Shown here piece by piece: positions 675 through 60,128 of a stretch of DNA of 64,000 nt (its first letter is position 1; the number at the start of each line of letters is the position of its first letter). Under the pieces are notes generated by a model that made no database searches, was not told the DNA's origin, and saw only the letters and a program-made list of their open reading frames with translations. The stretch lies in IMG/VR virus record IMGVR_UViG_3300048591_000147, positions 186,001 to 250,000 of that record; one strand, given 5' to 3'. The translations under genes were made by a program, and so were the position numbers.

Positions 675-1415
675 ATGAGATTCAGTAAATTTCTAACAGA
701 GAAGGAAGAGGCGAATAATTTGTCTGCAAACGTGCTTATTATAATGCACCGGATATTCGCCGCAGTAGAACAAACACACATAGAGAAAAGTGACGGCATG
801 TGTGAGTTCAATATTGGTCAAGCCATAAAAGATAAAGATCTAAAATCGCTGAACATCGCCATAAAGAAAGGTCCAGCACCATCTGCAAAGTTTGCTGTAA
901 AAAGTGACGGAGATGACTATTATATTGTTATTGAGACTCCGAAATACGAAGAAAATCTAGAAAGGGAAGATATAATCGCGATTTTGGAAAGCGCTTCATT
1001 AAAAACTCCGCTACATGATGCAATAACACACTTCTTAAAATATGCAAGAGATGAATTTGATGAGAAGAACGTACCATCACACCACGAACAGAAAACAGAC
1101 GCTAACCAGAATGTTGAGCAAAAATATGATGCGCTAATTAAGACCGTAAAGAGTAGATTAGAAGATCATCATTCAGCGGCTGCCGAAATAGACAGACAAT
1201 CGAAACAGACGTCTAATGCCTTTAAGCAAGACAGTTTCAAAATGGCGTTGGAAAAATTGAAAGAAGAAACTCATGGAAAGGATTTTAAAGGATTCTTATC
1301 AATAGTTAATAAGTTACCAGAAGGTGGATTCATTAAAGAGTTGGAAGGTGACCTTAAGAAAAAGATCTTGAGTAGATTAGAAGACTACTACGAGCATTAT
1401 TTAAACAAGCAATAA
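675..1415 (+). CDS. Hypothetical protein, candidate internal head protein
   Basis: 246-aa ORF; ATAAATA at 644-650; N-terminus MRFSKFLTE resembles the T4 capsid-targeting sequence. Confidence 0.6.
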   Translation: MRFSKFLTEKEEANNLSANVLIIMHRIFAAVEQTHIEKSDGMCEFNIGQAIKDKDLKSLNIAIKKGPAPSAKFAVKSDGDDYYIVIETPKYEENLEREDIIAILESASLKTPLHDAITHFLKYARDEFDEKNVPSHHEQKTDANQNVEQKYDALIKTVKSRLEDHHSAAAEIDRQSKQTSNAFKQDSFKMALEKLKEETHGKDFKGFLSIVNKLPEGGFIKELEGDLKKKILSRLEDYYEHYLNKQ

Positions 1416-14604: not shown

Positions 14605-14663
14605 AGTATCCTCAAATTTCAACTAAGATATTTATGCCGTTGTCCAAGCGTTAATTTAGGTCA

Positions 14664-31393: not shown

Positions 31394-31991
31394 TTACTTC
31401 CTGTTCCTTCTCTACGTCTGGTTCAATTATATCTTCATTGACACCTTCAGGCAACACGATGAATAACTTATCATCCAATTCATCGACTGCATCAGTATTG
31501 GGATCGTTGAAAAATAATACATCAGATTCGGTGTCACTTGAATCTTCGAACCCTACAATAAAGTTATCTCTACCGACTCTTTCCATCTCTAATAATTCCA
31601 TGAATGAAGGATTCAATCCTAAATCTTTCTTCACGGCTTTCTTGGTGTCTTGTGCCTTTTTCTCTGAGTTACCATATTGGTAAAAGGCGTGTCGTAGAAT
31701 TTGCGTAAAGTACGCGAACGGATTTTTTGATTTTTCTGGGTTGAAAGACTTCCATACTTTGACGACAGTTAAAAGGCCGAATGCCTGCATGTCTTCTTCG
31801 TGTGAGAACACGTTGGAATAGTCTGGGTGTTTCGCGTATCGTTTACATAAAACCATTATCATCTTACCAAGTTCATTCGTCATTCTATTTTGCGCATGAC
31901 TCAGTTCGATCTCTTTCATCAGGTCCGCATTGTTTAAATAGTTCTTCGGTTTCTTCTTTTTCACTATCTCTGTCATATTGATTAGCTCCAT
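31386..31991 (-). CDS. Late-transcription sigma factor (gp55-like)
   Basis: NYLNN, FNPEKSKNPFAYFTQI...AF; adjacent to gp47/46 as in T4. Confidence 0.9.
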   Translation of the reverse strand: MELINMTEIVKKKKPKNYLNNADLMKEIELSHAQNRMTNELGKMIMVLCKRYAKHPDYSNVFSHEEDMQAFGLLTVVKVWKSFNPEKSKNPFAYFTQILRHAFYQYGNSEKKAQDTKKAVKKDLGLNPSFMELLEMERVGRDNFIVGFEDSSDTESDVLFFNDPNTDAVDELDDKLFIVLPEGVNEDIIEPDVEKEQEVNE

Positions 31992-32065
31992 TTGCAGTTT
32001 AGTATAACAATAAAATCTATAAAGATCAAATCATAAATATGCATAATTAATGGGATTTGTATTTA

Positions 32066-35000
32066 ATGGACTTTAACGATAAAGATATTTTGAAAAAACT
32101 AATGGAGGCAGTTACTAAGCTTGCTGGTAATAGTCAATATTCAAGACCATCGGCTAACTCAGGGTCTTCAGCAGAAGACGCTTTAGAAAAATATCAAAAG
32201 TTTCTAGTTGAAGAAACTACGCTGGCCGGAAAATATCAAAAAGCATTCTCCAATGGGTTATTTAGAACCTTGGCCGGTTTACCAAAAACATTGAACAAGG
32301 TTTATGATCAGATCGAAGCTGACTTGCGCACCAATAATGACGCCATAAACAAGATACAGAAGCAAACAATAGAAAGTGTTAAAGCTCACAAACTGAATAA
32401 TAAAGAGATAACTAAACTAGCTCTGGAGACTGGTAAGATATCTGACGATATTAGCAAACACTCTAAAGCTGTTGGTGTTAATACTGCATTACAAAAACTT
32501 TCTAATGAGAAATTGAAGAACGCTACAGAAAAGCATAATGCCGCATTATCAGAACAGGCCAGCTTGATAAAGAAGCGATCAGAAGCAACTCATAAAATGC
32601 TTAAAGAAACCCTAGCCGATGAACTTAAAAAAATCGGGAGCGTGTTAAAACAGTCTGCCGCCGATCTTAAAGAATCAAGTGATGATGACGCAGAGATAAG
32701 ACGGAAAATATCAGAAAGTGCTAATGAGCTTCGTGACTCCCTTGATTTGATATCAAATAGTAAAATATTTGATAATCTTGATAAGCATGATCAGGATGCT
32801 ATAAAAGATTTTATAAAGAGTGGTTCAGTTGAAATGACTGACGCTGTTGTATCAGCGATGAAGAAATTTGAAGAGATGTCGCCAGCTATCCAAAATACTT
32901 TGAAATCATTGGTTAATAAATCGGTAGAACATATTAGAACTGGTGTTAGTGACATATCATCAAAATTGCACCGTGCCGGCGCAATGGCAGTTGTGTCTGG
33001 CAAGGGTATTTTAGATTCATATAGAGCACAATTAAGTGCTAACTTGATTGAATCAACGCCAACTTCCATTATGGGATATGGTATGGATGCCGGTGAACAA
33101 GCAGATATAATTAAAGGGTTTGCAAGAGAAATAGCATCAATCAGTGGCACTAATAATATGTCAAAGGCATATAACGAGAGTGTTACGTTATCCGATTTAC
33201 ATGACACCGCTAAATTGTATGGGTTGACTGGTAAAGCTGCACAAGAATTAGCTTTACAAAGCGTTCGGACTGTTAATCAAATGGGTGCTGGTACGTCTGG
33301 CACAAGTACATCCACCACTGCTAAAGCACTTATGCAGCAAATGTCGTCATCTGCGGCTTATTTACAAACTGATAAAGCGGCTTTTGCTCAAGACACTATA
33401 AACGAGTTACAGAGTGGCATATATGATAGTGAGATTACTCGCCTACGCATGCAAGGAAAAACTGGTGCCGATCTTTCCAAAAACATGATACAAAACATAA
33501 CTGCACTTAAAGGGAACACGGTACAATTAGGATTTAGTAATTCGTATGCGCAACAATTATTACAAAATTCCATGAATGCCAAATTCGGTGGACTTAGTGA
33601 ACTCATTAATCGTAAAGTGGCCTCTGGGATGGGCGGCCAAATAATACCAAATATGCTTGGTGGCAACGTTGCTAAAGAAAAGATGGATGCTTTTAGAAAA
33701 TATCAAGAGGGTGGTGGGTTCTCGGCACTAAAAACTCCTGAAGAACAAACTGCATATTTACAGCTTACACAAGATTTTGCTACGGCATATAACAAGGCAT
33801 ATGAAGCCAGTAATAATGCACCCGCTAACAGCATCGAAAAACGAGAAGCTGATAGTAAATTGATGGCGCTTGGTGCACAAATAGAAATATTACGTGCAAG
33901 AAACATTGACATGGCATCTCCAGAAACAATGTCAGCAGCGCTAAGATCGGGATTTGTACAAGAATCTATAACCAATCAAACTACTAAAGATTTTAGTCCA
34001 GTGGTAAACGTAAATAAAGAATCCGTGGCTGCTGCTGGAAGTATTGAGAGTTTTAACAATACTATGGGAGTATTTGAACAGCGATTCCTTGAATTATCAG
34101 AATGGGCAAGAGGTATTGCCAACAATCCATTTGGAAATCTAGCTGGAGCGGCAATTGGTGGTATTGGTAGTATGGTCGGTAGTGCTGTTGGTACTGGACT
34201 TACAATGTGGTTAATGGGAGCCGGTGGAGTTGCAGCGACAGCAGCTATAGGCACTGTAGTTGCAGGCGCATTAACAATTACAGGAATCGTGGCAGCAGTT
34301 GGTTTAGTAGCGTATTCAGTAGATACAATATTTGATTCTTTTAAAACACTGTTGAAATGGTATGGAGAGGACAGAACAAGAGAAGAAGAAGAGAGAAAAA
34401 GAGTTGCGGCAAGATATGAAGCAAGTAAAGCTAGAGAGGCATCAGGGCAGCCAGCAGTTCTTGGAGATATGTATAGAAAAGTATTCGAAGAGGCTACCGG
34501 AAAAACGCTTACTAAAGATGATGATTTTAGTTATGATGGTAAGGGTAGAATGACATATAATGGTGAAGTTGTCAGTGATGCAGATAGAATAAAGGTAGAA
34601 AATCTTGCGTATTCCAAACAAATTGCAAAAACTGGTAATAGCGACAGATTAACAGGTGCTCCATTAGAACAGCGTTCCAGAATATTAAGAGAAGAAGAGG
34701 CAGCATACCGTAATTGGAGAACTAAAGAAGTAACTCCTGTTATGCCATCTGGCGCACAGCGAACTGGCGGTAGAGGAAAAGCATTAACACCTGTAGCGCC
34801 CATGGTTAACCCAACACCTACCGCCGTTCCATCACCTATATCTAGTTCCGCACCATCAACACCAACTATTGCGCCGCAAACCTCTGCCATCGCAAACACA
34901 TCAGGCTTGACAGATGTACAAGCTAGCTTAGTAAACTCGTTGGCATCACAAGGCATAACAGACCCAAATAAAGTTTCTAATATATTGGCACAGGTAGAAG

Positions 35001-35737
35001 GTGAATCAAAATTTGTGCCGAAGAGTGAGAATATGAATTATTCCGCACAGCGACTAATGGAAGTGTTTCCATCACACTTCTCATCACTTGCGGATGCACA
35101 ATCAGTAGTAGATCAGGGTCAGGAAGCAATAGGTAATAGAGTTTATGGTGGTAGAAACGGTAACGCTCAGAATGAAGGATATAAGTATAGAGGAAGAGGA
35201 TTTATACAATTATCAAACAAAGATAATTATGAGATGTTCGGAAAAATAATAGGCGAAGATTTAGTAAATAATCCAGATCTAGCGAACGATCCTGTTATCG
35301 CGTCAAAGATAATGGCAGCCTATTTCAAACAACGGGAAAACACTGGTAAATATGATTTAACAGATATCAATTCCACAGGAAAGGCAGTTGGTTATGCAAC
35401 TGGTCCGAAAGAGACTGCCCATCGTGCCTCAATCGCAGAACAATTTAAGAGTAAACTAAGTCTTCAGTCAAATGTGACAGGATCTATCAATAGCAATCTT
35501 GCAAATCCCGCTAATAATCCAGTCACCATGTGGAGCATGATCGCTAATACATTGTCAACTGGTAATTCTGCATTGGTAAGCGGTATAGATAAGCTTAACG
35601 ATGGCATACAAACTAATAATAAATTAACTGGCATAACTGCTGCAAACACAAATCCAGAATTGAATCGCAAACCAGCTACGGAAAACGAGCAAAAGCCTTC
35701 TTACCGAGCGGGTAATAGACAAGTAGCCGCGACATAA
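32066..35737 (+). CDS. Tape-measure-like protein with C-terminal GH19 lysozyme/chitinase domain
   Basis: Long helical Ala-rich body, hydrophobic Gly/Ala segment, Pro/Thr linker, then ILAQ..GES, ENMNYSA.RL, VYGGRNGN, YRGRGFIQLS.KDNY; start 32057 (TTG) or 32066 (ATG). Confidence 0.8.
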   Translation: MDFNDKDILKKLMEAVTKLAGNSQYSRPSANSGSSAEDALEKYQKFLVEETTLAGKYQKAFSNGLFRTLAGLPKTLNKVYDQIEADLRTNNDAINKIQKQTIESVKAHKLNNKEITKLALETGKISDDISKHSKAVGVNTALQKLSNEKLKNATEKHNAALSEQASLIKKRSEATHKMLKETLADELKKIGSVLKQSAADLKESSDDDAEIRRKISESANELRDSLDLISNSKIFDNLDKHDQDAIKDFIKSGSVEMTDAVVSAMKKFEEMSPAIQNTLKSLVNKSVEHIRTGVSDISSKLHRAGAMAVVSGKGILDSYRAQLSANLIESTPTSIMGYGMDAGEQADIIKGFAREIASISGTNNMSKAYNESVTLSDLHDTAKLYGLTGKAAQELALQSVRTVNQMGAGTSGTSTSTTAKALMQQMSSSAAYLQTDKAAFAQDTINELQSGIYDSEITRLRMQGKTGADLSKNMIQNITALKGNTVQLGFSNSYAQQLLQNSMNAKFGGLSELINRKVASGMGGQIIPNMLGGNVAKEKMDAFRKYQEGGGFSALKTPEEQTAYLQLTQDFATAYNKAYEASNNAPANSIEKREADSKLMALGAQIEILRARNIDMASPETMSAALRSGFVQESITNQTTKDFSPVVNVNKESVAAAGSIESFNNTMGVFEQRFLELSEWARGIANNPFGNLAGAAIGGIGSMVGSAVGTGLTMWLMGAGGVAATAAIGTVVAGALTITGIVAAVGLVAYSVDTIFDSFKTLLKWYGEDRTREEEERKRVAARYEASKAREASGQPAVLGDMYRKVFEEATGKTLTKDDDFSYDGKGRMTYNGEVVSDADRIKVENLAYSKQIAKTGNSDRLTGAPLEQRSRILREEEAAYRNWRTKEVTPVMPSGAQRTGGRGKALTPVAPMVNPTPTAVPSPISSSAPSTPTIAPQTSAIANTSGLTDVQASLVNSLASQGITDPNKVSNILAQVEGESKFVPKSENMNYSAQRLMEVFPSHFSSLADAQSVVDQGQEAIGNRVYGGRNGNAQNEGYKYRGRGFIQLSNKDNYEMFGKIIGEDLVNNPDLANDPVIASKIMAAYFKQRENTGKYDLTDINSTGKAVGYATGPKETAHRASIAEQFKSKLSLQSNVTGSINSNLANPANNPVTMWSMIANTLSTGNSALVSGIDKLNDGIQTNNKLTGITAANTNPELNRKPATENEQKPSYRAGNRQVAAT

Positions 35738-35799: not shown

Positions 35800-37542
35800 A
35801 TGGCATTAAGTAAATTCTATAAAATGATAACCCCTGCTTCGCCAACTACTCCAGTTGGTGACAATCAGGATCTAAGCGGAGTTGGAGGGTTATATGGAAA
35901 TTATGCGTGGTATCATAGAATCATAGCCGGTTCTTCCAGCAGAATCACAAGATATCGTGAATATGATCTAATGGATAATGATATTGACGTTAACGTTTGT
36001 CTGGATTTAATGGCTGAAGAAATCACGGGCAACAATATCAAAGGTGAGCTACCGCTTAAATTAGAGATTGTTACAGGGCAAGAGCAATATGTAGCACCAC
36101 GAGTAGTAGTGACGCTAAACGCCGCATTAAGAACTTGGTGTACGATCCATGACTGGCATTCTAAATTATTTTCTATTGCTAGAAATACTATAAAATATGG
36201 TGACACGTTCTTTCTAAAACCAAAACATAAACAGAAATCTTTCATTTATGTTAACACTAAGAATGTGTTGGGCGCTATTGTAAGAGAGGATGATATAACT
36301 GATGTGCGTGGTTGGCAGATCAGAATGGACTCTAATGCTGTTAATGGCCCTGCTGGATCATATGGCACGGGTGGTGATAGTACTATTGGAGATGGTATTG
36401 TAGAATATGACATCAAAGATATCATAAGATTCTCTTTGTATCAGGAAACAGACGAAGAGGCACCGTTTGGTAAGTCTGTATTACATCCAATCTATAAGAC
36501 TTTCAAACAGAAAGAGTTGTTAGAAGATGCCATTCTAATCTATAGAATACAAAGAGCACCAGAAAAAAGAGCGTTTTATATTGACGTTGGTAATATGCAT
36601 CCCGGTCAACGTGCGAAGCATATGGAATCCATCAAAGCTGAAATCAAACAAAAGAAGATTCCTAGTTATGGCGGCGGTGCGTCACAGATAGAAAGTGTTT
36701 ATAACCCAATGTCACAGCAAGAGGACTTTTGGTTCCCTATGCGTGCAGACGGTAGTGGATCAAGAGTAGAAGTATTACCTGCTGGTCAGAATCTAGGGTC
36801 TTTAGAAGATTTAATGTACTTCTACAATAAAATCTTCAGAGGTCTAAGAATTCCAAGATCGTTTGTCGATCCAACGTCAGAGGGTGGTGGCGTAGCTAAT
36901 GATGGTAAGGTTGGTATAGCGTATATACAAGAAGTCAAATTTTCGTTGTATATGGAACGATTACAGCGTTGTTTAGAAAAGACATTTGATAAAGAGTTCA
37001 AAGATTTTATTAAATTAAACGGCATCAACGTTGACACAACAATTTTCAAAATTACATTACCACCACCATCAAATTATGAAGCATCGCGTAAGCAGATGAT
37101 GGATGCAGACCTATTGGCCAATTACAGTACTGTTTCTGGAATACAAGAAATTTCTAAACGATTCGGATTGGTTAAGTATGGACAATGGACAGAAGCGGAT
37201 TTGAAGATGAATGAAAGACTATTACGCCAAGAAAAGGGTTTAAATCCTGATGGCGATGATCGTGACCTACCTAAACTTTATAATCCAGAACAAGCTGAGT
37301 TAGGCGGATTTGAAGGTGGATTTGGTGGGGGCGGCGGTAGCTTTGCTGGAGGCGGCGGTGATATTCCAGATTTAGACGGTGGTGATGATGGAACTGGCGA
37401 AGGTGGTGAAACCGGGGTAACTGGTGAAGGTGGTTTACCAGAATTAGGTGGTAATGTTGGTGGAAAACCTAATGCACCAGCTAATGCTAATCAGAAAGGC
37501 GCTCCACAAAACAGTAAGCCAGCAGCAGGCAAAACCAAATAA
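35800..37542 (+). CDS. Portal protein (gp20-like)
   Basis: LLEDAILIYRIQRAPEKRAFYIDVGNM, EDFWFP, LPAGQNLG, L.IP. Confidence 0.95.
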   Translation: MALSKFYKMITPASPTTPVGDNQDLSGVGGLYGNYAWYHRIIAGSSSRITRYREYDLMDNDIDVNVCLDLMAEEITGNNIKGELPLKLEIVTGQEQYVAPRVVVTLNAALRTWCTIHDWHSKLFSIARNTIKYGDTFFLKPKHKQKSFIYVNTKNVLGAIVREDDITDVRGWQIRMDSNAVNGPAGSYGTGGDSTIGDGIVEYDIKDIIRFSLYQETDEEAPFGKSVLHPIYKTFKQKELLEDAILIYRIQRAPEKRAFYIDVGNMHPGQRAKHMESIKAEIKQKKIPSYGGGASQIESVYNPMSQQEDFWFPMRADGSGSRVEVLPAGQNLGSLEDLMYFYNKIFRGLRIPRSFVDPTSEGGGVANDGKVGIAYIQEVKFSLYMERLQRCLEKTFDKEFKDFIKLNGINVDTTIFKITLPPPSNYEASRKQMMDADLLANYSTVSGIQEISKRFGLVKYGQWTEADLKMNERLLRQEKGLNPDGDDRDLPKLYNPEQAELGGFEGGFGGGGGSFAGGGGDIPDLDGGDDGTGEGGETGVTGEGGLPELGGNVGGKPNAPANANQKGAPQNSKPAAGKTK

Positions 37543-38222: not shown

Positions 38223-38609
38223 ATGAACAACGAACATTTAAACAAATTTATAGATGGTGTAATTAATAGTAACGATGACGATGTATCCGCATCAGCACAT
38301 CAATTCGCCTTAGAAAAAGTTAAGTCCATTGTAGCAGAGTTTAAAAGCGCTAAATTAAACAAATTACATGAATCGCTACAGGCAGTATTACTAGAATATA
38401 ATGAGAAGACTGGTTATAACATAGAAATTAGCCATTCTGGTGAGGTTATTATAAATGGTACGGTAGTTGGTAAAGTCCAATACGATATGAACGATTTTGA
38501 CTCTGGTGTTAGCTTCGTAGCCGCTGACGGTCGTTTTTCAAGAGAATTTACGACAGTGGAAGAACTAACAGCTTGGCTTGGACGTTCATATGGGGGTAAA
38601 GGTAAATGA
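38223..38609 (+). CDS. Hypothetical prohead-associated protein
   Basis: GGAG SD; overlaps the gp21 start. Confidence 0.7.
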   Translation: MNNEHLNKFIDGVINSNDDDVSASAHQFALEKVKSIVAEFKSAKLNKLHESLQAVLLEYNEKTGYNIEISHSGEVIINGTVVGKVQYDMNDFDSGVSFVAADGRFSREFTTVEELTAWLGRSYGGKGK

Positions 38610-39232
38610 AGAATCAATTATTGATAGAAGAATATTCTAATAACGAGTCTGTTATAGTATGTGAGGCTAGTGAAGATTCTAAGAATTTATTCTTAAAAGG
38701 CATCTTCATGCAGGCAGACGTACAGAACAGAAACAAAAGAATATACCCTTTACATGAAATGTGTCAGGCGGTAGCGTCAGCTAACAGAATGATCGCTGAA
38801 AATGGCGGTATATTCGGAGAGGCAGACCATCCAAATACATTGAATATTAATATCGACCGAATATCACATGTCATAACAGAATTGTATATGGATGGGAGCA
38901 ACGCGATAGGAAAGGCTAAAATTTTAGACACACCAATGGGCAAGATCGTGAAAGAATTGACTAAAACTGGTGTTAAAATTGGCGTTTCCAGTAGAGGAAC
39001 TGGTCAGGTAAATGAAGAGGGATTAGTTAGTGGGTTTAATATTGTATCAGTGGATGTAGTTGTAAACCCTAGTGCAATTGGTGCTACTCCGACTTCCATA
39101 TATGAAAATCTACAATCATATAAAAAGAATGAGCGAATAATTACATTGGCGGAATCATTACAGACTGATAAGGCGGCACAAAAGTATTTCACTAGAGAAA
39201 TTGATGCGTTCTTGAAATCGTTGCTTAAGTAA
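38606..39232 (+). CDS. Prohead protease (gp21-like)
   Basis: GIFMQAD..NRN.RIYP, GEADHP, SHVI, TPMG, GVSSRGTG, D.V..PS. Confidence 0.95.
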   Translation: MKNQLLIEEYSNNESVIVCEASEDSKNLFLKGIFMQADVQNRNKRIYPLHEMCQAVASANRMIAENGGIFGEADHPNTLNINIDRISHVITELYMDGSNAIGKAKILDTPMGKIVKELTKTGVKIGVSSRGTGQVNEEGLVSGFNIVSVDVVVNPSAIGATPTSIYENLQSYKKNERIITLAESLQTDKAAQKYFTREIDAFLKSLLK

Positions 39233-39298: not shown

Positions 39299-39667
39299 TC
39301 AGAATCGCAATTCGTCATCACCGCCATCGTCATTGAAAGACTGTGGCTCATTTTTCAATTTCTTGTTTGAAGCGGATGTAGCAGAGGATAGAGCAGCAAT
39401 TTCTGGTGCTAGACCGTTTAATTCATTATAGATGTCAACCATCTTTTCACCAGAATCAGTGACGTCACCAAGATATACTAAGCCTAAACTTTCTAGTTCA
39501 TCTATGGTGCGCTTTGTATTAGCTGAAACGGTGTCATACGAAATTGCACCAGAGTACAGCTTGGCCAATACCGATTTCTGGATATCACTTAGATCACCAT
39601 ATGAGATGGTTTCCGAGCCTACTCCAGCTACATTTTGTGATTCATTTACAAGATGTTGAATTTTCAT
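39299..39667 (-). CDS. Hypothetical late protein
   Basis: GGAG SD; TATAAATA on minus strand at 39695-39702; L..LGLV...VT..G winged-helix-like segment. Confidence 0.65.
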   Translation of the reverse strand: MKIQHLVNESQNVAGVGSETISYGDLSDIQKSVLAKLYSGAISYDTVSANTKRTIDELESLGLVYLGDVTDSGEKMVDIYNELNGLAPEIAALSSATSASNKKLKNEPQSFNDDGGDDELRF

Positions 39668-39707
39668 TTATGTTACTCCATGTTAGGTTAATGATATTTA
39701 TAACTAA

Positions 39708-53527: not shown

Positions 53528-54931
53528 ATGAATGAAAATCAAATATTAGGTGAAGGCTGGCAGGAAACTAAGAGTGCCCTTCTTGAAGGTCTATCACAAT
53601 CAAAAAGAGAAATCACAGAAAAGGTTCTAGATAATACACGTTTGTATTTAACTGGTGGATTAACTGAAACTGCTGCTGCTGGTGCGATTGTTGCAAATGA
53701 CATTGCAGGCTTCCGTAAGACTCTATTACCGTTGATTCGCCGTATTATCCCCGGTACTATTGCTACAGAAATCGTCGGTGTTCAGCCAATGTCTGGCCCA
53801 GTAGCTCAAGTGTTTTCAATGAAATACACTTATGGCGAAGATATGACTCATGATCCATCTCGTTCTCAGTTCGGCGGATTTAATATCTCTGCTGGCGACG
53901 AAGCGTTTGGTAATGCTAGCCCAATTCGTCAGTTTTATGCTGGTAATACTGGTGCTGCACAAGATGCAGGTGCTTCTGGTATAGGTTACACTGGTGCACA
54001 ACCAACTGATATCGATGCAGCTACTGCTGACGGTGCAGGTTGGGGAGCAACATTAGATTCAACTACTTATACTTCCGGTACTACATTGTACGGTGAAGCT
54101 GTTGGTGGTAGTCTGTACGGTGGTTCCGGTTCCTTCCTAGAAGGTTCTGCTGGTCGTAAGATGGGCCTACAGTTGAAATCTCAGGCTGTTGAAGCCAAGA
54201 GCCGTAAACTACAGGCTGGTTGGACAATCGAAGCGATGCAGGATGCGAGAAACATGCATGGTATCAATATCGAAAATGAAATGACTAAAGCCTTATCCGC
54301 TGAAATCGTTCAGGAAATCGACGCTGAAATCATCAATGATCTATTAGCATTGGCTGGTACTTTGAGAACTTTCGATTTCGCAGCAACTTCAGCACCTAAC
54401 TATGCTCCGGCATTCGTTGGTGATCGTTTCTCACACGTTGGTGTAAGAATCGGTGAAGTAGCGAACGTTATCGCACGTAAGACTCGTAGAGGTCCGGGTA
54501 ATTTCGTGGTTGTTTCACCAATGATCGTGTCTGTTCTACAGACTGCTGCTAAGGCTGTATTCGCACCAGCGGTTGAAGGTTCATTCAAGGGTCCAAACAA
54601 CAACATGTTGGTTGGTACTTTAAACGGTTCTATCAAGGTTTATTCATACTTGTGGAATCAGGCTGAACCGGGTTCTTCAGACCCAGCAGGATCTGACAAG
54701 ATTCTAGTTGGTTTGAAATCAGGTAATGGTGAAACTGATGCAGGTTATTTCTACTGCCCATATGTGCCTGTAATGAGCAGCGGAGTTGTTGTTAACCCTG
54801 TTACAATGCAGCCAGTGGTTGGTTTGATGACTCGCTACGGTAAAGCAACATTCACTGATCCTACCATTTCACTAGGTAACTCATCAGATTACTACGGACG
54901 TGTTAACGTTGTTAACCTAGAGTTCGTGTAA
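53528..54931 (+). CDS. Major capsid protein (gp23-like)
   Basis: GVQPMSGP, VEAKSRKLQAGWTIEAMQD, EIDAEII, TRRGPGN, DAGYFYCPYVP, MTRYG. Confidence 0.97.
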   Translation: MNENQILGEGWQETKSALLEGLSQSKREITEKVLDNTRLYLTGGLTETAAAGAIVANDIAGFRKTLLPLIRRIIPGTIATEIVGVQPMSGPVAQVFSMKYTYGEDMTHDPSRSQFGGFNISAGDEAFGNASPIRQFYAGNTGAAQDAGASGIGYTGAQPTDIDAATADGAGWGATLDSTTYTSGTTLYGEAVGGSLYGGSGSFLEGSAGRKMGLQLKSQAVEAKSRKLQAGWTIEAMQDARNMHGINIENEMTKALSAEIVQEIDAEIINDLLALAGTLRTFDFAATSAPNYAPAFVGDRFSHVGVRIGEVANVIARKTRRGPGNFVVVSPMIVSVLQTAAKAVFAPAVEGSFKGPNNNMLVGTLNGSIKVYSYLWNQAEPGSSDPAGSDKILVGLKSGNGETDAGYFYCPYVPVMSSGVVVNPVTMQPVVGLMTRYGKATFTDPTISLGNSSDYYGRVNVVNLEFV

Positions 54932-54955: not shown

Positions 54956-54983
54956 AAAAAGGGGACCGTATGGTCCCCTTTTT
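54956..54983 (+). terminator. Intrinsic terminator after the capsid gene
   Basis: AAAAAGGGGACC-gtat-GGTCCCCTTTTT. Confidence 0.9.
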
Positions 54984-55028
54984 CATTTGTGGAAATAAAA
55001 ATATAAATATGTAAAAAGACCTAATTAA

Positions 55029-55664
55029 ATGAAAAGATTTATTCAATATCTCCAAGAAGCACCATTACCAGAAGATTGGGATGCTGCGATATATTCAGAA
55101 AGAGTCCCATTCGCTCAACGTATAAGATACGCTAAAGCAAAAGCCAAACAACTTGGTGCAGGTTCATCAAGAGTCGCATTCGAGATTCCATACCAAGGCA
55201 GACGAACGGTATTAAAAATTGCCAAGAATAATAAAGGCATGGCACAAAATGCTGAAGAGGCATCAGCGTTATCCGATTGGTATCTGAAGGGGCTAAATCT
55301 AACAATCCCATTAATAGATTATGACGAACAAACTGACAGTCCAACATGGATTCATACGGAGTTTGCTACCAAGGCTAAAAATTCTGATTTTAAGAAAGCT
55401 ACTGGTGCACCACTATATGATTTTGTTATGTACTGTGTTAGACAAAGCGGAAGAGAGCGTAGCGGTAGTAATAAACCAGAAGATTATGGGATAGATCCAG
55501 ATAGCGAATTGGTCCAGAACTTTACAGATTACGTAGGTAACTATACACATCATCCGTGGGTGGAATATACTAATTTAAGAAATTGGGGGATTTATCAGGG
55601 TAATCCAGTAATAATCGATATTGGGCTAACTCAAGATATATGGAATGATCATTATAAACGTTGA
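55029..55664 (+). CDS. Protein-kinase-fold late protein
   Basis: LGAGSSRVAF Gly loop, VLKIA, QNAEE, NWG, VIIDIGL; TATAAATA at 55002. Confidence 0.65.
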   Translation: MKRFIQYLQEAPLPEDWDAAIYSERVPFAQRIRYAKAKAKQLGAGSSRVAFEIPYQGRRTVLKIAKNNKGMAQNAEEASALSDWYLKGLNLTIPLIDYDEQTDSPTWIHTEFATKAKNSDFKKATGAPLYDFVMYCVRQSGRERSGSNKPEDYGIDPDSELVQNFTDYVGNYTHHPWVEYTNLRNWGIYQGNPVIIDIGLTQDIWNDHYKR

Positions 55665-55701
55665 TCAATAAATACTACTATAAGAACAACGAGGAATATT
55701 A

Positions 55702-56130
55702 ATGAGTTTCATAGTACTAGAGCGGTTTGCATACACACCATTTGGCACATTCGGTAGATTGGTCTACAACGACTTCAGAGCGTTTTCTGTTGAACTGCCA
55801 TGGGCCGATAACAAACCTAGAGTATCATGCATCCCAGAGGGCAAATACACGGTTAAGTGGTACGATTCACCAACGTTTGGCAAGACGTTAGCAGTGATTG
55901 GTGACACAGTTAGTTTATTTCCTAATAATACACATCAACGGTCAGCAATTCTATTCCACAAAGCAAACACAATGGATGACTTATTGGGATGTATAGGATT
56001 GGGTAAATCATTAGGATACATAAATGGTAAGTGGGCAGTTACGAGTAGTACGCCAGCCATTACAGAATTTTTAAATCTGAAAATACCTGATAACACCACA
56101 TTATTCATTAAACAATTTTTAATCTCATAA
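55702..56130 (+). CDS. DUF5675-family protein (L,D-peptidase-like; candidate endolysin)
   Basis: T.G.L, ELPW.DN...SCIPEG.Y, ILFHKAN....LGCI.LG. Confidence 0.8.
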   Translation: MSFIVLERFAYTPFGTFGRLVYNDFRAFSVELPWADNKPRVSCIPEGKYTVKWYDSPTFGKTLAVIGDTVSLFPNNTHQRSAILFHKANTMDDLLGCIGLGKSLGYINGKWAVTSSTPAITEFLNLKIPDNTTLFIKQFLIS

Positions 56131-56147
56131 ATAATTATATAATTACT

Positions 56148-56471
56148 ATGGAATCTAAAATGCGTTTATCATTCTCGGAATATGTAGAGTCAAAAAACAT
56201 TTTAAAAATGGCAGTGGAAGACGCTCCGAAACATATGCAAGTGTTTAACGTCACCAAATATTGCAAGATACCAGTGCATGAAGATATCAAATCTAATTCC
56301 AAAGCATATGTTGGATTAAAGCCCAAAGACTCTGTCCAAGTGATATGGGAAACACACGAACAACAAATGATCGTAAGGTATATAATAATCAACGAAGAAT
56401 ACAATTATTTCCCCACATGGACGAATAAAAAGTTTTGCAACTGGTTGACCCTCAACTGTAAAGTCATATAA
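56148..56471 (+). CDS. Hypothetical late protein
   Basis: ATAAATA at 56127; MRLSFSEYVE near the N-terminus. Confidence 0.65.
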   Translation: MESKMRLSFSEYVESKNILKMAVEDAPKHMQVFNVTKYCKIPVHEDIKSNSKAYVGLKPKDSVQVIWETHEQQMIVRYIIINEEYNYFPTWTNKKFCNWLTLNCKVI

Positions 56472-56520
56472 TACCTGAAATTAATTACCTATTAAATAAA
56501 TAGTTAAAAGGTGATTTTTC

Positions 56521-57171
56521 ATGGAAAATATTTTAAATTTCGTAGTATCTTATGGATGGGGTGCTTTTTTAATTATATGTGTTTTCTTTATGACATACGT
56601 ATTAGTATTTAAAGATAAAGTACTTCAAGATGTGTTTACTAAAGAGCGCGTGGATTCCGATATAAAATTCCATTCGTTCTTTCGCCACGCTCAATACCGT
56701 ATGATGGTTGAGCTTCCAGCGTTAACATTATGTCCAGACAAACCAGTGAAACAGGGGATGTTTATCGACCTGTTACAGGTGGCGACTAAGTGCACGTATG
56801 ATACGTGTCTGAACGTTGTTAGCATGGACATGTCTCATTGGGATTCAAATAGATGGGCTAGTGAGATTTCCACTGCGATGGCCAACAACTTTAAGTCGTG
56901 GAATGACCAAGCTACCAAGATGTCTATACCACCAATCGTCATTAATAAATTTATGGTATGGTGTACTCCAACTATAACAATGGTGGGTGAATATATAACC
57001 GCTTTGGCAGATTCCAAGATATATAGTGACAATCTAACCAGAACAAATACACTATTACTGATAATGAATCTATTATTGATTAATATTATTACTGATGCAG
57101 AGAGAACATTGCGAGATATCAATGGTGACCTTGACGGTGTGCTATATAAAGGTGAACCGATAGAGCATTGA
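56521..57171 (+). CDS. Membrane-anchored protein (candidate holin)
   Basis: Single N-terminal TM helix plus soluble domain; late motif at 56496. Confidence 0.55.
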   Translation: MENILNFVVSYGWGAFLIICVFFMTYVLVFKDKVLQDVFTKERVDSDIKFHSFFRHAQYRMMVELPALTLCPDKPVKQGMFIDLLQVATKCTYDTCLNVVSMDMSHWDSNRWASEISTAMANNFKSWNDQATKMSIPPIVINKFMVWCTPTITMVGEYITALADSKIYSDNLTRTNTLLLIMNLLLINIITDAERTLRDINGDLDGVLYKGEPIEH

Positions 57172-57209
57172 TCGGATAAATATTATTACTCAAAATAAGG
57201 TTGAAATAG

Positions 57210-60128
57210 ATGGGCGTATATGATGGATTTGCTGATTCACCAAATCAGATAATAAAAGAAGGCCGCGAGATTACTATTAATTTCGAGAGAGGCGCTAACA
57301 ATACCGGAATTGTTACATGGAATGTCCCAGCACCGGCTGCCGGATGTGGTAGTGATGCACCGGGTACATATGACGGTATCGTTATTACTGTAAGTAGTGG
57401 TCCAGCTAATTATCTAAGTACATCGCCAAAAGATAGTTTTTATTATTCTTATGATCCAACTGTCGATCCTAATTTACACAGTGCGGATAAACTTGACACG
57501 GCAATGGTCATTGGTGCGTTTTATCATGATAGAACAACTACTAGATTAGTAATTAATGATGTACAACAGCGAACACCATATTACATTTCTGGTTATGCAG
57601 TGGATAAAGTCGGCAGATACCACAGAGAGGGGGTGCACGCATATTCTTTACCAACTGGTGAACAAGAGATCGGTACACCAGATATAAAGGCATATCATGA
57701 TGTAGTTATCGATGTAGTGGGTGGTATAAGACCCTCGCTAAAGACTGGACTGCCTCACAGAAACTTCAACGAAAAACTCAACATCAATGATGTTGAATAC
57801 AGTATAACTGTGAATGGATCTGAAGCTATTACATATGCGGAATTAGTGAAGACAATAAACAAGAAGATCGCTCTGTTGGAAAACCCAATATTAAGTGCGC
57901 CATATCCTTTTGCTGGTGATTTGTATTTAGACAAAGCTAACAAAAAATTACATAGATGGACGGGGTTGACACATGAAGAGGTTCCATTAACAGTCTCTAT
58001 AACCGATCCATCTATACCAGCTATCGGTACGTATTGGACAGATAAGGACGATGGTATTTTATACCTATATGACTCTTCTGGATGGGTTGTAGTTGACACT
58101 ATTAATTTCTCTGCACAGCCAGACCAATTAGCATGTGGTCAGGTATGGTTTGATGGCGTTGACGCATGGCAGTGGGATGGTAATCATTGGTGTAAGCTAT
58201 GTGTTTATAACCAGATTAGAAATCCTTTACTACCACCATTACTAACATGTAATACTTATTGGTTCGATTCTGATGGACAATTATTTTACAGATGGAATGT
58301 AAATGTAAAAAAATGGGATGAAAAATTAATAATTCTTTCAGACAAAGATCCCAACACCCTAAACACTGGCGATTTCTGGTTCAACGAAACAGAAAGTAAG
58401 GTTTATGAATATGTTGGCGCGGCATGGGGGTTATTAACATCCATAAAATACGCTGAAAGAAACTCAGAAGGTGAACTAGATAATCCCGGCGTCAATGTAT
58501 TCTGGTTCATACCATCAGAAAGTTTATTGTTTAGAAGAGACAACGAAGATTTGGAATGGATCGAACAACCATTTACGTCATATCCTACAGACCCGCTAGA
58601 TAGAAAATCATGTGATATGTGGTGGAATACCACAAGCACCAATGACATTTATGCGTGGGATGAACTTAACTCACAATGGGTTAATGTAGAAGAGTTTTTT
58701 AATCAGCCAATCGATCCTATGATTGCGCCGACATTACCAGCGTGCGCTGTTTGGTATAACCCATCTAATAATACGATTAAAATTGTAAAAGATTCTCGCT
58801 GTGACGATATAAAATATATATCACACTCACACGATCCAGATAATTTACCATTAGGATCTGTTTGGTTTGATGGTGTGTTGTATTTTGTGTATGACGGTAG
58901 AGACTGGGTACGCATCAATCCTATTCAAAGTAATGAAGATCCATTTCAGGTGGATGTTGGCGAATACTGGTACAACCCTAACACACAAATTCTTTATATT
59001 TGGGATGGGCTTGTATGGTCTGTGGTAACACCAAAATATGTTCCAGTGACACCATTAGTTAATACTTTGTGGTATAATTTGATTGATGAAAAATTATATA
59101 CATGGACTGGTACTAGATGGGCAGAAAAGTTATCATTGGGATATGTTGAATTGATCCCAGCTACCAAAAAAGACGGTCGTTCAATACTTAAATTCTTAAC
59201 CAGAGATGCTGGCTGTCAATATGGTATTTTTGTCGTACAAGAGAATGACGATTTATTATCTAATTTAACGCAGAATGTAATTTATTATGAGCCTGTAGAA
59301 GGCGGTTCTGGGTTAGTTGCTGGGCCAACGTATTCACAACTTGGTATAGGCGATGATGGTTCTCCAGATGAAAGAAGAGATTTACACAACATAATTCGCA
59401 GTTTCCTTGGGGCTGGTTCCGTGAAAGTTGAATTGAAGAAAGACGATATCGACCAATGTATTAATAATGCATTAAGAGAGCTTAGAAAATATTCTGGCGC
59501 GGCATATAAGCGCGGCTTTTTCTTCTTAGATTTGAAGAGAAACCAACAGACGTATATATTAACTAATAAATGCGTAGGATTTAATAAAATAGTTGATGTA
59601 TTAAACACCCATAGAATGCGTGCAGGCTGGTTGCGGACATCTAATATGGGTCAAGATGTGTTTGCGTATGCAGCGCTACAACAACTTTATTCTCTCGGCA
59701 CGTTTGATATATTGACTTTTCATTTAGTTTCAGCGTACATTGAAGAACTTGAAACATTGTTCGCTTCAAAAATATTGTTCAATTGGGACGAACGTACCAG
59801 AGAATTAAAGTTGTATCAGATGGTCGCACAGAATGAAAGAATATTGATTGATGCTACTCTGGAGCGTACTGAACAAGAGTTATTAGTTGATAGAGAAACA
59901 GGCTTATGGATTCAGCGCTGGGCGGTAGCAGAAGCTAAGCAGATATTGTCTCAGATCAGAGGCAAGTTCCAAACTCTTCCGGGACCAAGTGGAAGTACCA
60001 CACTGAACAGTCAGGAATTAATAACACAAGCAGAATCAGAGAAACAGGAATTGCGAGCAATGTTGTTGGATAACTCAATGCAAAATATTGACGATTATGG
60101 TGCGGCAGTACATTTGGTGATAGGATAA
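57210..60128 (+). CDS. Neck protein (gp13-like) with a large N-terminal Trp-rich repeat extension
   Basis: C-terminal LGA..VKVEL, A.AK..L..IRGKF..LPGP.G...LN..EL; repeated G..W.D...LY.W...W units. Confidence 0.85.
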   Translation: MGVYDGFADSPNQIIKEGREITINFERGANNTGIVTWNVPAPAAGCGSDAPGTYDGIVITVSSGPANYLSTSPKDSFYYSYDPTVDPNLHSADKLDTAMVIGAFYHDRTTTRLVINDVQQRTPYYISGYAVDKVGRYHREGVHAYSLPTGEQEIGTPDIKAYHDVVIDVVGGIRPSLKTGLPHRNFNEKLNINDVEYSITVNGSEAITYAELVKTINKKIALLENPILSAPYPFAGDLYLDKANKKLHRWTGLTHEEVPLTVSITDPSIPAIGTYWTDKDDGILYLYDSSGWVVVDTINFSAQPDQLACGQVWFDGVDAWQWDGNHWCKLCVYNQIRNPLLPPLLTCNTYWFDSDGQLFYRWNVNVKKWDEKLIILSDKDPNTLNTGDFWFNETESKVYEYVGAAWGLLTSIKYAERNSEGELDNPGVNVFWFIPSESLLFRRDNEDLEWIEQPFTSYPTDPLDRKSCDMWWNTTSTNDIYAWDELNSQWVNVEEFFNQPIDPMIAPTLPACAVWYNPSNNTIKIVKDSRCDDIKYISHSHDPDNLPLGSVWFDGVLYFVYDGRDWVRINPIQSNEDPFQVDVGEYWYNPNTQILYIWDGLVWSVVTPKYVPVTPLVNTLWYNLIDEKLYTWTGTRWAEKLSLGYVELIPATKKDGRSILKFLTRDAGCQYGIFVVQENDDLLSNLTQNVIYYEPVEGGSGLVAGPTYSQLGIGDDGSPDERRDLHNIIRSFLGAGSVKVELKKDDIDQCINNALRELRKYSGAAYKRGFFFLDLKRNQQTYILTNKCVGFNKIVDVLNTHRMRAGWLRTSNMGQDVFAYAALQQLYSLGTFDILTFHLVSAYIEELETLFASKILFNWDERTRELKLYQMVAQNERILIDATLERTEQELLVDRETGLWIQRWAVAEAKQILSQIRGKFQTLPGPSGSTTLNSQELITQAESEKQELRAMLLDNSMQNIDDYGAAVHLVIG

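What the first reader, a model, noticed from the sequence alone, without database searches (positions are those of the whole stretch)
55002..55664. Kinase-fold protein with a capsid-targeting leader directly after the major capsid gene
Seen: late promoter, MKRFIQYLQE leader, Gly loop GAGSSR, VLK lysine, helix-C-type Glu (NAEE), EYTNLRNWG catalytic-loop region and DIG in place of DFG. No Asp is visible at the usual catalytic position. Inference: a virion-packaged kinase or pseudokinase delivered with the DNA, able to act before phage gene expression.
Basis: partly seen in the sequence, partly recalled or inferred. Interest (0 to 1): 0.6.

Follow-up and report, generated by a model that had tools for sequence, protein, structure and literature searches.

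The report
Minimal phage kinase with capsid-targeting leader
A jumbo phage gene just after the capsid gene encodes a stripped-down kinase-fold enzyme from a large, unnamed phage-only family, and its short leader and late promoter suggest, without proving, that it is packed into the phage head like the T4 internal proteins and injected with the DNA.

Summary
ORF 55029..55664 (211 aa) lies after a gp23-type capsid gene and a strong hairpin, 19 nt downstream of TATAAATA.

- **Fold.** A confident AlphaFold model (pLDDT 92) matches only kinase-like folds: protein kinases, RIO, Bud32, Ark1 and APH.
- **Active-site residues.** Across 71 relatives the Gly-loop, the beta3 Lys, the helix-C Glu, the N-W-G Asn and the DxG Asp are invariant or nearly so. 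The catalytic-loop acidic residue is Asp in 65 and Glu in 6, and this protein has Glu. A dead pseudokinase is therefore unlikely.
- **Truncation.** The chain ends 14 residues after DxG, so most of the C-lobe is missing.
- **Family.** No Pfam model hits it. The family is large (1142 cluster representatives) and almost entirely viral.
- **Packaging (indirect evidence only).**
  - The first 10 residues mirror the T4 IPII/IPIII capsid-targeting sequence at its functional positions 4, 7, 8 and 10.
  - The leader's L/I-x-E is conserved family-wide.
  - Complete genomes with a family member all encode a gp21-type protease.
  - The phage has a gp55-type late sigma factor.
  - ATAAATA precedes 44% of homologues, against 10% of neighbouring ORFs.
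  - Relatives are fused to GNAT and ART-PolyVal domains.
- **Weaknesses.** The position next to the capsid gene is not conserved, and no virion proteomics exists.

The packaged-effector reading is plausible but unproven.

The parts
54956..54983 (.). Hairpin (12-bp stem, 4-nt loop, T-run) ending the capsid transcript. It separates the capsid gene from the target.
   Evidence: terminator-like site; -19.5 kcal/mol, z -3.70, 0 of 200 shuffles fold as well.
55002..55009 (+). TATAAATA, a T4-type late-promoter motif 19 nt upstream of the ATG.
   Evidence: Core ATAAATA is the top 7-mer upstream of ORFs (72/442 vs 3 expected). 23 of 35 genomic TATAAATA copies are intergenic, most of them 19-36 nt before a start. 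A gp55-like sigma factor is encoded.
55029..55664 (+). ORF of 211 aa: minimal kinase-like protein, member of an unnamed phage family (phrog_4301, unknown function).
   Evidence: dN/dS 0.07.
55029..55058 (+). Residues 1-10, MKRFIQYLQE: a leader resembling the T4 capsid-targeting sequence, with a candidate gp21-type cleavage site L-x-E before Ala11.
   Evidence: T4 IPII/IPIII start MKTYQEFIAE then A. Family P1 = E in 200/200, P3 = L/I in 191/200, P4 and P7 mostly hydrophobic. Residues 1-7 have pLDDT < 50.
55059..55148 (+). Residues 11-40: family-specific N-terminal module (PLPxDWD, then a helix carrying F28, Y34, A35) packed on the N-lobe.
   Evidence: P12 invariant; P14, W17, F28, Y34, A35 present in at least 90%. 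Block pLDDT is 90-97.
55155..55172 (+). Gly-rich loop, G43-A-G45-S-S-R48.
   Evidence: G45 and R48 invariant, G43 70/71. Weak profile hit of residues 40-83 to the kinase domain of BREX PglW (E 0.006).
55215..55217 (+). K63, equivalent of the beta3 (VAIK) lysine.
   Evidence: 71/71; lies in strand 58-65 of the model.
55257..55259 (+). E77, equivalent of the helix-C glutamate.
   Evidence: 71/71; lies in helix 68-82 of the model.
55563..55589 (+). Catalytic-loop region E179-x5-N185-W-G. The family has D/E-x5-N-W-G, one residue longer than the canonical D-x4-N.
   Evidence: Position 179: D 65, E 6. N185 70/71; W186 and G187 71/71. The distant relatives RaK2 gp356 and CBB_444 have D-x4-N.
55617..55625 (+). 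D197-I-G199, equivalent of DFG. The protein ends 12 residues after G199.
   Evidence: D197 and G199 71/71. Only one short helix (202-209) follows.
53528..54931 (+). Context: gp23-type major capsid protein, with L-T-E (45-47) upstream of the conserved core, as in T4 gp23.
   Evidence: PF07068, 7.5e-97; alignment to T4 gp23.
52547..53485 (+). Context: 312-aa ORF immediately upstream of the capsid gene. Its size and position suggest the gp22-type scaffold, which is my inference.
   Evidence: phrog_10922, function unknown; the role is inferred from position only.
38606..39232 (+). Context: gp21-type prohead protease (Peptidase_S77), the enzyme that would remove the leader.
   Evidence: PF03420, E 2.3e-24.
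31386..31991 (-). Context: gp55-type late sigma factor.
   Evidence: T4 gp55 vs own genome, E 2.8e-7; phrog_234, late sigma transcription factor, 2e-25.

Best explanation
The gene encodes a minimal phosphotransferase of the protein-kinase-like fold. It has an N-lobe and a C-lobe cut back to the catalytic and Mg-binding loops.

My proposed sequence of events:
1. The gene is transcribed late from its own T4-type promoter.
2. Its 10-residue amphipathic leader targets the protein to the scaffolding core of the prohead.
3. The gp21-type protease removes the leader after Glu10.
4. The mature enzyme (residues 11-211) travels in the head with the DNA.
5. It enters the next host at injection and modifies host targets, most likely proteins, before any phage gene is expressed.

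What is shown: the fold, conservation of the active-site residues, leader conservation, the promoter motif, the protease and sigma factor in the genome, and the domain fusions in relatives.

What is inferred: enzyme activity, the substrate, packaging, cleavage and delivery.
For: **Fold**
- AF2 gives pLDDT 92.2 and pTM 0.88.
- The Foldseek PDB hits listed are almost all kinases or kinase-like enzymes: Src, ULK1, HPK1, APH(4), ArkI, Bud32.
- VIA-align over 48,161 chains gives ULK4 Z 7.5, Ark1 7.0, Bud32 6.3 and RIO1 6.3. 49 of the top 50 are kinase-like.
- BFVD hits include annotated phage and giant-virus kinases.
- Weak profile hits, all at the Gly-loop to helix-C region, go to Pkinase, YrbL, PglW and PrkT.

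**Active site**
- K63, E77, D197 and G199 are 71/71, N185 is 70/71, and position 179 is always D or E.

**Leader**
- It matches T4 IPII/IPIII at residues 4, 7, 8 and 10, the positions reported to direct targeting and processing (PMC9026906).
- In the 200 stand-alone family members whose leader could be located by its E-x-P-x-P-x-x-W/F motif, P3 is L/I in 191. P1 is Glu in all 200, but the locating pattern requires that Glu, so only the 71/71 alignment count is independent evidence for it. P4 and P7 are mostly hydrophobic and leader length is 8-21.
- The leader is disordered in the model. It is a low-confidence linker in a GNAT fusion (residues 110-136, pLDDT < 50).

**Machinery**
- The S77 protease is in this genome, in XacN1 and in Slickus01.
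- It is in 8 of 10 large contigs that carry a homologue. The two without it are 51% and 32% complete.

**Late expression**
- A gp55-like sigma factor is encoded.
- ATAAATA is 24-fold enriched upstream of ORFs.
- It lies at -21 to -29 of the gene or its operon in 5 of 5 other contexts.
- It precedes 19 of 43 unique viral loci, against 10% of neighbouring ORFs (p 9e-9).

**Effector company**
- GNAT is fused in at least 9 of 64 long relatives.
- ART-PolyVal is fused in 2, the best at E 4.6e-25. These are the protein-modifying domains of injected polyvalent proteins (PMC5512222).

**In-genome pattern**
- 20 ORFs start with a similar leader, against 9 +/- 3 in shuffles. 9 of the 20 also carry ATAAATA upstream (p 0.002).
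Against: - No virion proteome covers any leader-bearing member. ORF170 does not appear in the main text of the XacN1 paper, and the one supplement held lists it only as a predicted ORF with no proteomics column.
- The neighbourhood is not conserved. In XacN1 and other phages the gene sits among nucleotide-metabolism and NAD-related genes: NT5C, SIR2, GNAT, AAA_33, dCMP deaminase.
- The hydrophobic-x-E motif is kept at internal domain junctions of fusion proteins. It could be a structural cap of the domain rather than a cleavage site.
- This protein has Glu where the family usually has Asp, and the acidic residue sits one position further from the Asn than in canonical kinases.
- Fold-match scores are moderate (Z <= 7.5, TM about 0.4).
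- The best-matching small kinases include an RNA kinase (Ark1) and small-molecule kinases (APH), so a protein substrate is not established.
- The ribosome-binding site is weak.
- I could not inspect model coordinates, so active-site geometry is unchecked.
Confidence: 0.42

Rival explanations
1. A late-expressed kinase that stays in the cytoplasm and is not packaged. It modifies host or phage proteins late in infection, for example in assembly, lysis timing or superinfection control. On this reading the N-terminal hydrophobic-x-E segment is simply the start of the folded domain.
For: - The fold and active-site evidence is the same as for the best explanation.
- The gene is often far from head genes.
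- The hydrophobic-x-E motif is retained inside fusion proteins.
- The leaderless distant relative RaK2 gp356 is absent from the RaK2 virion proteome.
Against: - The leader is disordered in two models, yet its P1, P3, P4 and P7 pattern is conserved and matches the T4 targeting sequence.
- The family co-occurs with the gp21-type protease in all complete genomes tested.
- Relatives are fused to ART-PolyVal.
Confidence: 0.25
2. A kinase of a non-protein substrate, packaged or not. The substrate could be RNA or tRNA, as for the archaeal 2'-kinase Ark1, or a nucleotide or other small molecule, as for the aminoglycoside kinases that occur fused to GNAT acetyltransferases.
For: - Ark1/ArkI and APH enzymes are among the best structural matches.
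- The C-lobe platform that binds protein substrates in canonical kinases is missing.
- Fusions or neighbours include AAA_33 P-loop kinase, dCMP deaminase and NT5C.
- tRNA- and translation-related genes lie upstream in this window.
Against: - Z scores for Ark1 and APH are tied with those for protein kinases.
- The helical substrate-binding subdomain of APH enzymes is also absent.
- The fusion partners GNAT and ART-PolyVal are read as protein modifiers in polyvalent proteins.
- No sequence-level link to any of these families exists.
Confidence: 0.2
3. A catalytically dead pseudokinase that acts by binding, either as a decoy or as a structural internal head protein.
For: - This protein and its closest relatives have Glu instead of Asp at position 179, with non-canonical spacing to the Asn.
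- The C-lobe is truncated.
Against: - Lys63, Glu77, Asn185, Asp197 and the Gly-loop are invariant or nearly so across more than 70 diverse members. Position 179 is never non-acidic.
- Purifying selection is strong (dN/dS 0.07).
Confidence: 0.08

Closest known systems
T4 internal proteins IPII/IPIII (also IPI and Alt): head-packaged, gp21-processed, injected proteins with a capsid-targeting sequence
   Same: - A 10-residue N-terminal leader M-K-x-aromatic-x-x-aromatic-[I/L]-x-E followed by Ala (compared).
- A gp21-type protease and a gp55-type late system in the genome.
- A gene that need not lie in the head module.
   Different: - The cargo is a kinase-like enzyme, not a small basic protein or an ADP-ribosyltransferase.
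- Packaging and cleavage are not demonstrated here.
- Leader length varies from 8 to 21 residues in the family.
Kinase-PolyVal (Pfam PF18762): C-lobe-less Ser/Thr/Tyr-type kinase domains of polyvalent proteins (Iyer et al. 2017, PMC5512222)
   Same: - Phage-borne, with loss of the C-terminal kinase subdomain and retained ATP-binding and phosphotransfer residues.
- Occurs with ART and GNAT domains, and stand-alone versions exist.
- A Kinase-PolyVal cluster appears among the feature-space neighbours (score 0.93).
   Different: - None of the 71 family members scanned matches PF18762, even at E <= 1.
- The described signature (Glu before strand 2, His...Asp with an insert) is not evident here.
- That family is reported from Verrucomicrobia-Chlamydia and Bacteroidetes (pro)phages, whereas this one is from T4-core jumbo and large myoviruses.
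Phage T7 protein kinase gp0.7 (T7K)
   Same: A phage kinase-fold enzyme that acts on host proteins. T7K has recently been shown to disarm host defences by phosphorylation (PMC13645617). T7-like kinases appear among the structural neighbours.
   Different: - No detectable sequence relationship (hhalign probability 1%).
- T7K is an early gene product made after injection, is larger, and carries a C-terminal shut-off/DNA-binding domain and a DPV motif.
Minimal atypical kinases: Bud32, RIO1/2 and archaeal RNA kinase Ark1/ArkI
   Same: Best structural matches of similar small size, lacking an activation segment (Z 6-7).
   Different: - Sequence identity is only 12-18% and there are no profile hits.
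- Different catalytic-loop spacing (D/E-x5-N).
- A unique PLPxDWD N-terminal module and a phage-only distribution.

Membership tests
Protein kinase-like (PKL) fold superfamily | Bilobal kinase fold: five-stranded N-lobe with helix C, hinge, catalytic loop and Mg-binding loop | tested here: met
   The AF2 model (pLDDT 92.2) matches almost only kinase-like chains. Foldseek E is about 5e-4 to 3e-3. VIA-align Z is 7.5-5.5 and 49 of the top 50 are kinase-like. The scores are moderate.
Protein kinase-like (PKL) fold superfamily | Conserved Gly-rich loop, beta3 Lys, helix-C Glu and DFG-type Asp, in that order | tested here: met
   G43xG45, K63, E77 and D197xG199 are invariant or nearly so in 71 sequences, and lie in the expected secondary-structure elements.
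Protein kinase-like (PKL) fold superfamily | Catalytic loop with Asp and an Asn five residues later (D-x4-N) | tested here: inconclusive
   The family has D/E-x5-N-W-G and this protein has Glu179. The distant relatives RaK2 gp356 and CBB_444 have D-x4-N. Geometry could not be inspected.
Protein kinase-like (PKL) fold superfamily | Significant match to a curated kinase-clan profile (Pkinase, RIO1, APH, Kdo, YrbL and others) | tested here: not met
   The target has no Pfam hit at E <= 0.1. Family members give only sub-threshold hits: Pkinase 0.002-0.007, YrbL 0.001, APH_6_hur 0.065. hhalign against E. coli YrbL gives probability 0.6%.
Kinase-PolyVal (PF18762) | Match to the family profile | tested here: not met
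   0 of 71 members match at E <= 1. There is only a feature-space neighbour at 0.93.
Kinase-PolyVal (PF18762) | Loss of the C-terminal kinase subdomain with catalytic residues retained | tested here: met
   The chain ends 12 residues after G199, with one short helix following. The description of the family is from PMC5512222.
Kinase-PolyVal (PF18762) | Signature residues: Glu before strand 2, Gln in the last N-lobe strand, an insert between catalytic His and Asp | tested here: inconclusive
   No conserved His precedes position 179. Position 109 in the last N-lobe strand is His 63 / Gln 6. No family alignment was available for a direct comparison.
T4-type capsid-targeted internal head proteins | N-terminal targeting sequence of about 10 residues, with determinants at positions 4 and 7 (targeting) and 8 and 10 (processing) | tested here: met
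   The target has F4, Y7, L8, E10 and T4 IPII/IPIII have Y4, F7, I8, E10. The roles of these positions are from PMC9026906.
T4-type capsid-targeted internal head proteins | gp21-type prohead protease in the same genome | tested here: met
   Peptidase_S77 at window 38606..39232. It is also in XacN1, Slickus01 and 8 of 10 large contigs carrying homologues.
T4-type capsid-targeted internal head proteins | Late transcription | tested here: inconclusive
   The evidence is at motif level only: TATAAATA at -19, genome-wide enrichment of ATAAATA, a gp55-like sigma factor, and the motif upstream of 19 of 43 homologues. No RNA data.
T4-type capsid-targeted internal head proteins | Physical presence in the virion, with the leader removed | not testable with these tools
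T7 kinase family (gp0.7; PF27024) | Sequence or profile similarity to T7 gp0.7 | tested here: not met
   hhalign of the family profile against T7 gp0.7 gives probability 1%. No Pfam hit.
Polyvalent proteins | Large multidomain polypeptide combining several effector domains | tested here: not met
   This protein is a single domain of 211 aa. Relatives are fused to GNAT (at least 9 of 64), ART-PolyVal (2), DUF6934 (3), AAA_33 (1) and dCMP deaminase (1).

The most novel reading that the evidence does not exclude
This family is a widespread class of ready-made effector kinases. The T4-type capsid-targeting system loads them into the heads of jumbo and large T4-core phages and injects them with the DNA. 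They would phosphorylate host targets, such as defence or translation proteins, before any phage gene is expressed. That would be a pre-loaded counterpart of the T7 kinase strategy, and a new enzymatic cargo class for the capsid-targeting pathway.
Probability: 0.3. Interest if true: 0.8.

Novelty: new variant of a known kind. Interest (0 to 1): 0.6.

Why it matters
Injected phage proteins act in the minutes when the phage genome is most exposed to host defence. The only well-studied enzymatic cargo of the T4-type targeting route is the ADP-ribosyltransferase Alt.

A phage kinase, T7K, was recently shown to disarm many defences, but it must first be synthesised. A kinase delivered pre-made would close that gap.

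The family is large (1142 cluster representatives at 50% identity), almost entirely viral, unnamed and absent from Pfam. One characterised member would therefore annotate many jumbo-phage genes. Its very small kinase core is also of structural interest.

The claim is directly testable in cultured phages that carry homologues: XacN1, Xoo-sp13 and the Alishewanella phages.

Tried and rejected
**Searches that found nothing**
- Nucleotide search of the region against isolated phages: no match.
- Sequence and profile searches against PDB sequences: only a spurious repeat-protein hit to the PLP motif.
- Pfam, NCBIfam and PHROGs give no function for the target.
- hhalign of the family profile against T7 gp0.7 and E. 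coli YrbL: no relationship.
- No member matches Kinase-PolyVal or Phage_T7_kinase in Pfam.

**Neighbour analysis**
- The 268-aa gene directly upstream in a 79% relative is not homologous to the 268-aa HD-domain gene in this window.
- Immediate neighbours in five contexts share no family.

**Virion proteomics**
- XacN1 ORF170 does not appear in the paper's main text, and the one supplement held lists it only as a predicted ORF with no proteomics column.
- RaK2 gp356 is absent from the virion list, but it is a leaderless distant relative.
- CBB_444 is not mentioned in the main text of the CBB paper.

- The search for related loci with the 71-sequence alignment failed for lack of a conserved stretch. 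A 12-sequence alignment worked.

**Statistical note**
- The full 8-mer TATAAATA is not enriched in the window. Only the positional analysis of the 7-mer core is informative.

**Not used**
Full report
**What is there**

The window is part of a complete 314,956-bp phage genome with direct terminal repeats and 39% GC. Its core is T4-like:
- gp23-type major capsid protein at 53528..54931 (PF07068, E 7.5e-97);
- portal at 35800..37542;
- gp21-type prohead protease at 38606..39232 (PF03420);
- gp55-type late sigma factor at 31386..31991 on the minus strand;
- a large gp13-like neck protein at 57210..60128.

The finding is ORF 55029..55664 (+), 211 aa. A strong hairpin at 54956..54983 ends the capsid transcript (-19.5 kcal/mol, z -3.7). 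TATAAATA lies at 55002..55009, 19 nt before the ATG. The gene is under strong purifying selection, with dN/dS of 0.07 against an 85% homologue.

**Is the promoter call justified?**

The 8-mer alone is not enriched in the window (4 found, 8 expected), but the positional evidence is strong.
- Of 35 genomic copies, 23 are intergenic although only 14% of the genome is intergenic. Most lie 19-36 nt upstream of a start on the same strand.
- The 7-mer core ATAAATA is by far the most enriched word at -45..-8 of ORFs: 72 of 442 ORFs, against 3 expected.
- The phage encodes a gp55-type sigma factor, so a T4-type late promoter is a reasonable reading.
- The motif travels with the gene family. It lies at -21 to -29 of the gene, or of the first gene of its two-gene operon, in all five other contexts first examined: XacN1, Slickus01 and three metagenomic phages.
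- In 43 unique viral loci it precedes 19 homologues (44%), against 10% of the other ORFs in the same loci (binomial p 9e-9).

No RNA data were examined, so late expression remains motif-level inference.

**The protein**

No Pfam or PDB sequence match exists. PHROGs places it in phrog_4301, function unknown.

The family is large:
- 469 clusters at 90% identity in the word-indexed search;
- 1142 representatives at 50% identity with E <= 1e-3 in the exhaustive search;
- Atlas clusters that are 98-100% viral.

Named isolates with clear homologues are Xanthomonas phages XacN1 (ORF170, 52%) and Xoo-sp13, and Alishewanella phages Slickus01 and Slicko01. None has a functional name.

More distant relatives are found by profile in three phages:
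- Rhodothermus phage RM378 (hhalign 98.7%);
- Klebsiella phage RaK2 (gp356);
- Pectobacterium phage CBB (CBB_444).

**Fold**

An AlphaFold2 model built on 71 homologues is confident (pLDDT 92.2, pTM 0.88). Only residues 1-7 fall below 50.
- The Foldseek PDB hits listed are almost all protein kinases or kinase-like enzymes: Src, ULK1, HPK1, APH(4)-Ia, ArkI, Bud32. E is about 5e-4 to 3e-3 and TM about 0.4.
- An independent alignment against 48,161 representative chains gives ULK4 Z 7.5, Ark1 RNA kinase 7.0, Bud32 6.3 and RIO1 6.3. 49 of the top 50 are kinase-like, and the other is the related SAICAR synthetase fold.
- Viral models that match include annotated T7-like and giant-virus kinases.
- The scores are moderate, but the unanimity and the motif order make the fold assignment secure.
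- Weak profile hits in family members all fall on the Gly-loop to helix-C segment: Pkinase 0.002, YrbL 0.001, PglW 0.006, PrkT 0.007.

**Active site**

In the 71-sequence alignment the following are invariant or nearly so:
- G43-x-G45-S-S-R48 (Gly-loop);
- K63 (beta3);
- E77 (helix C);
- N185-W-G;
- D197-x-G199.

Six residues before the Asn there is always an acidic residue: Asp in 65 sequences and Glu in 6. This protein and its closest relatives have Glu179.

The spacing is one residue longer than the canonical D-x4-N. The distant leaderless relatives in RaK2 and CBB keep the canonical spacing.

The chain ends 12 residues after G199, so the activation segment and helices F-I are absent. This is a minimal kinase core.

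Conservation of every nucleotide- and metal-binding residue argues for an active enzyme rather than a pseudokinase. I could not inspect coordinates, and activity is untested.

Other invariant polar residues (R48, Q73, D97, and the N-terminal PLPxDWD module) are specific to the family and remain unexplained.

**The leader**

I read the T4 IPII and IPIII N-termini from the T4 record. Both begin MKTYQEFIAE followed by Ala. The target begins MKRFIQYLQE followed by Ala.

A review of the T4 work states that the first 10 residues of IPIII suffice for head incorporation. Targeting depends mainly on residues 4 and 7, and processing on residues 8 and 10 (PMC9026906). The target has aromatic residues at 4 and 7, Leu at 8 and Glu at 10.

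Across the family (unless stated):
- 200 stand-alone members were located by their E-x-P-x-P-x-x-W/F motif. Leader length varies from 8 to 21 residues and the leader sequence drifts.
- P3 is Leu or Ile in 191 of the 200, and P4 and P7 are mostly Phe, Leu, Ile or Tyr.
- P1 is Glu in all 200, but the locating pattern requires that Glu. The independent evidence for it is the alignment, where E10 is 71/71.

T4 gp23 and this phage's capsid protein both carry L-T-E upstream of the conserved core. This is consistent with the same L-x-E protease specificity, which is my inference.

The leader is not part of the confident fold. It is disordered in the target model. In a GNAT-kinase fusion the equivalent segment is a low-confidence linker (residues 110-136, pLDDT < 50).

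The gp21-type protease is present in every complete genome tested that carries a family member:
- this genome, XacN1 and Slickus01;
- four metagenomic genomes at least 90% complete.

It is present in 8 of 10 large contigs. The two without it are 51% and 32% complete.

Within this genome, 20 ORFs begin with a similar leader, against 9 +/- 3 in shuffles. Nine of the 20 also carry the late motif upstream (hypergeometric p 0.002). One of these lies right beside the protease gene.

**What weakens the packaging idea**

- The position after the capsid gene is not conserved. In a 79% relative three genes intervene. In XacN1, Slickus01 and two other phages the gene lies among non-structural genes: 5'-nucleotidase, GNAT, SIR2, AAA_33 kinase, dCMP deaminase, macro domain.
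- The hydrophobic-x-E motif is also kept at internal junctions in fusion proteins. This fits either inter-domain processing or a structural role.
- No virion proteome covers a leader-bearing member.
- The leaderless RaK2 relative is absent from the RaK2 virion list. That fits leader-dependent packaging but proves nothing.

**Company the domain keeps**

Of 64 longer relatives:
- at least 9 carry an N-terminal GNAT acetyltransferase;
- 3 carry DUF6934;
- 2 carry a C-terminal ART-PolyVal ADP-ribosyltransferase (best E 4.6e-25);
- single cases carry AAA_33 or a dCMP deaminase.

Tandem duplications also occur.

Iyer et al. describe ART, GNAT and a C-lobe-less kinase as the protein-modifying domains of polyvalent proteins, which are injected with phage or plasmid DNA (PMC5512222). 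This family is not that kinase by profile: 0 of 71 members match PF18762. It shares the truncated design and the partner domains.

**Most likely mechanism and rivals**

I judge the fold assignment at about 0.9 and catalytic competence at about 0.65. The full chain (late synthesis, leader-directed entry into the prohead, cleavage after Glu10, injection, early action on host targets) I put at about 0.4.

The rivals are:
- the same enzyme acting in the cytoplasm late in infection (0.25);
- a kinase of RNA, nucleotides or other small molecules, suggested by the Ark1 and APH matches and the nucleotide-metabolism neighbours (0.2);
- a pseudokinase (0.08).

**Novelty**

Injected enzymatic cargo (Alt), capsid-targeting leaders, phage kinases (T7K; PMC13645617) and truncated kinases in polyvalent proteins are all known. 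I found no description of this large, unnamed, phage-only family of minimal kinases, nor of its family-wide T4-type leader and late promoter. I therefore rate it a new variant of a known kind. It has clear experiments available in cultured relatives.

Noticed in passing
window 39299..39667 (-), with TATAAATA at 39695..39702 (-): A 122-aa ORF directly beside the prohead protease gene. It starts with a leader of the same type (MKIQHLVNE, then SQN) and has a perfect late-promoter motif upstream. It has no PHROG match. It is a candidate small prohead-core or internal protein, like T4 gp67/gp68.
   Followed up: partly
whole genome (G000); e.g. window 675..1415 (+): 20 ORFs begin with a capsid-targeting-like leader (hydrophobic at P7 and P4, L/I/V at P3, Glu at P1), against 9 +/- 3 in shuffles. 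9 of them also have ATAAATA upstream. This is a possible set of packaged proteins.
   Followed up: partly
window 48786..51010 (+): A run of translation- and RNA-type auxiliary genes just upstream of the head module: an RF-1-domain protein (ArfB-like, E 9e-5), a 198-aa class-II aminoacyl-tRNA-synthetase-core-like fragment (E 0.005, weak), and an HD-domain protein of 268 aa.
   Followed up: no
window 5284..14622 (-) and 32057..35737 (+): Two very large ORFs, of 3112 aa and 1226 aa. Neither was analysed.
   Followed up: no
window 51385..51999 (+): A 204-aa ORF with a signal-peptide-like N-terminus, a faint CAP/SCP-domain hit (E 0.09) and TATAAATA upstream at 51351.
   Followed up: no
window 55665..57209: The stretch between the capsid gene and the neck gene is a variable region. 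In a 79% relative it holds five extra genes, two of them on the opposite strand, around the kinase gene. DUF5675 and the following small genes are conserved.
   Followed up: partly
L015, L079, L081-L083 (Rhodothermus phage RM378): Four regions of RM378 match the family profile; two of them lie within Rm378p120, so they represent up to three loci. In Rm378p120 the N-W-G Asn is replaced by Gln.
   Followed up: no
L036, L051, L060, L066, L072, L073 (viral contigs): Several fusion proteins share an unannotated N-terminal domain ending in a conserved HDQTKAGAGFWDKHRG segment just before the kinase domain. This may be the DUF6934 partner seen.
   Followed up: no
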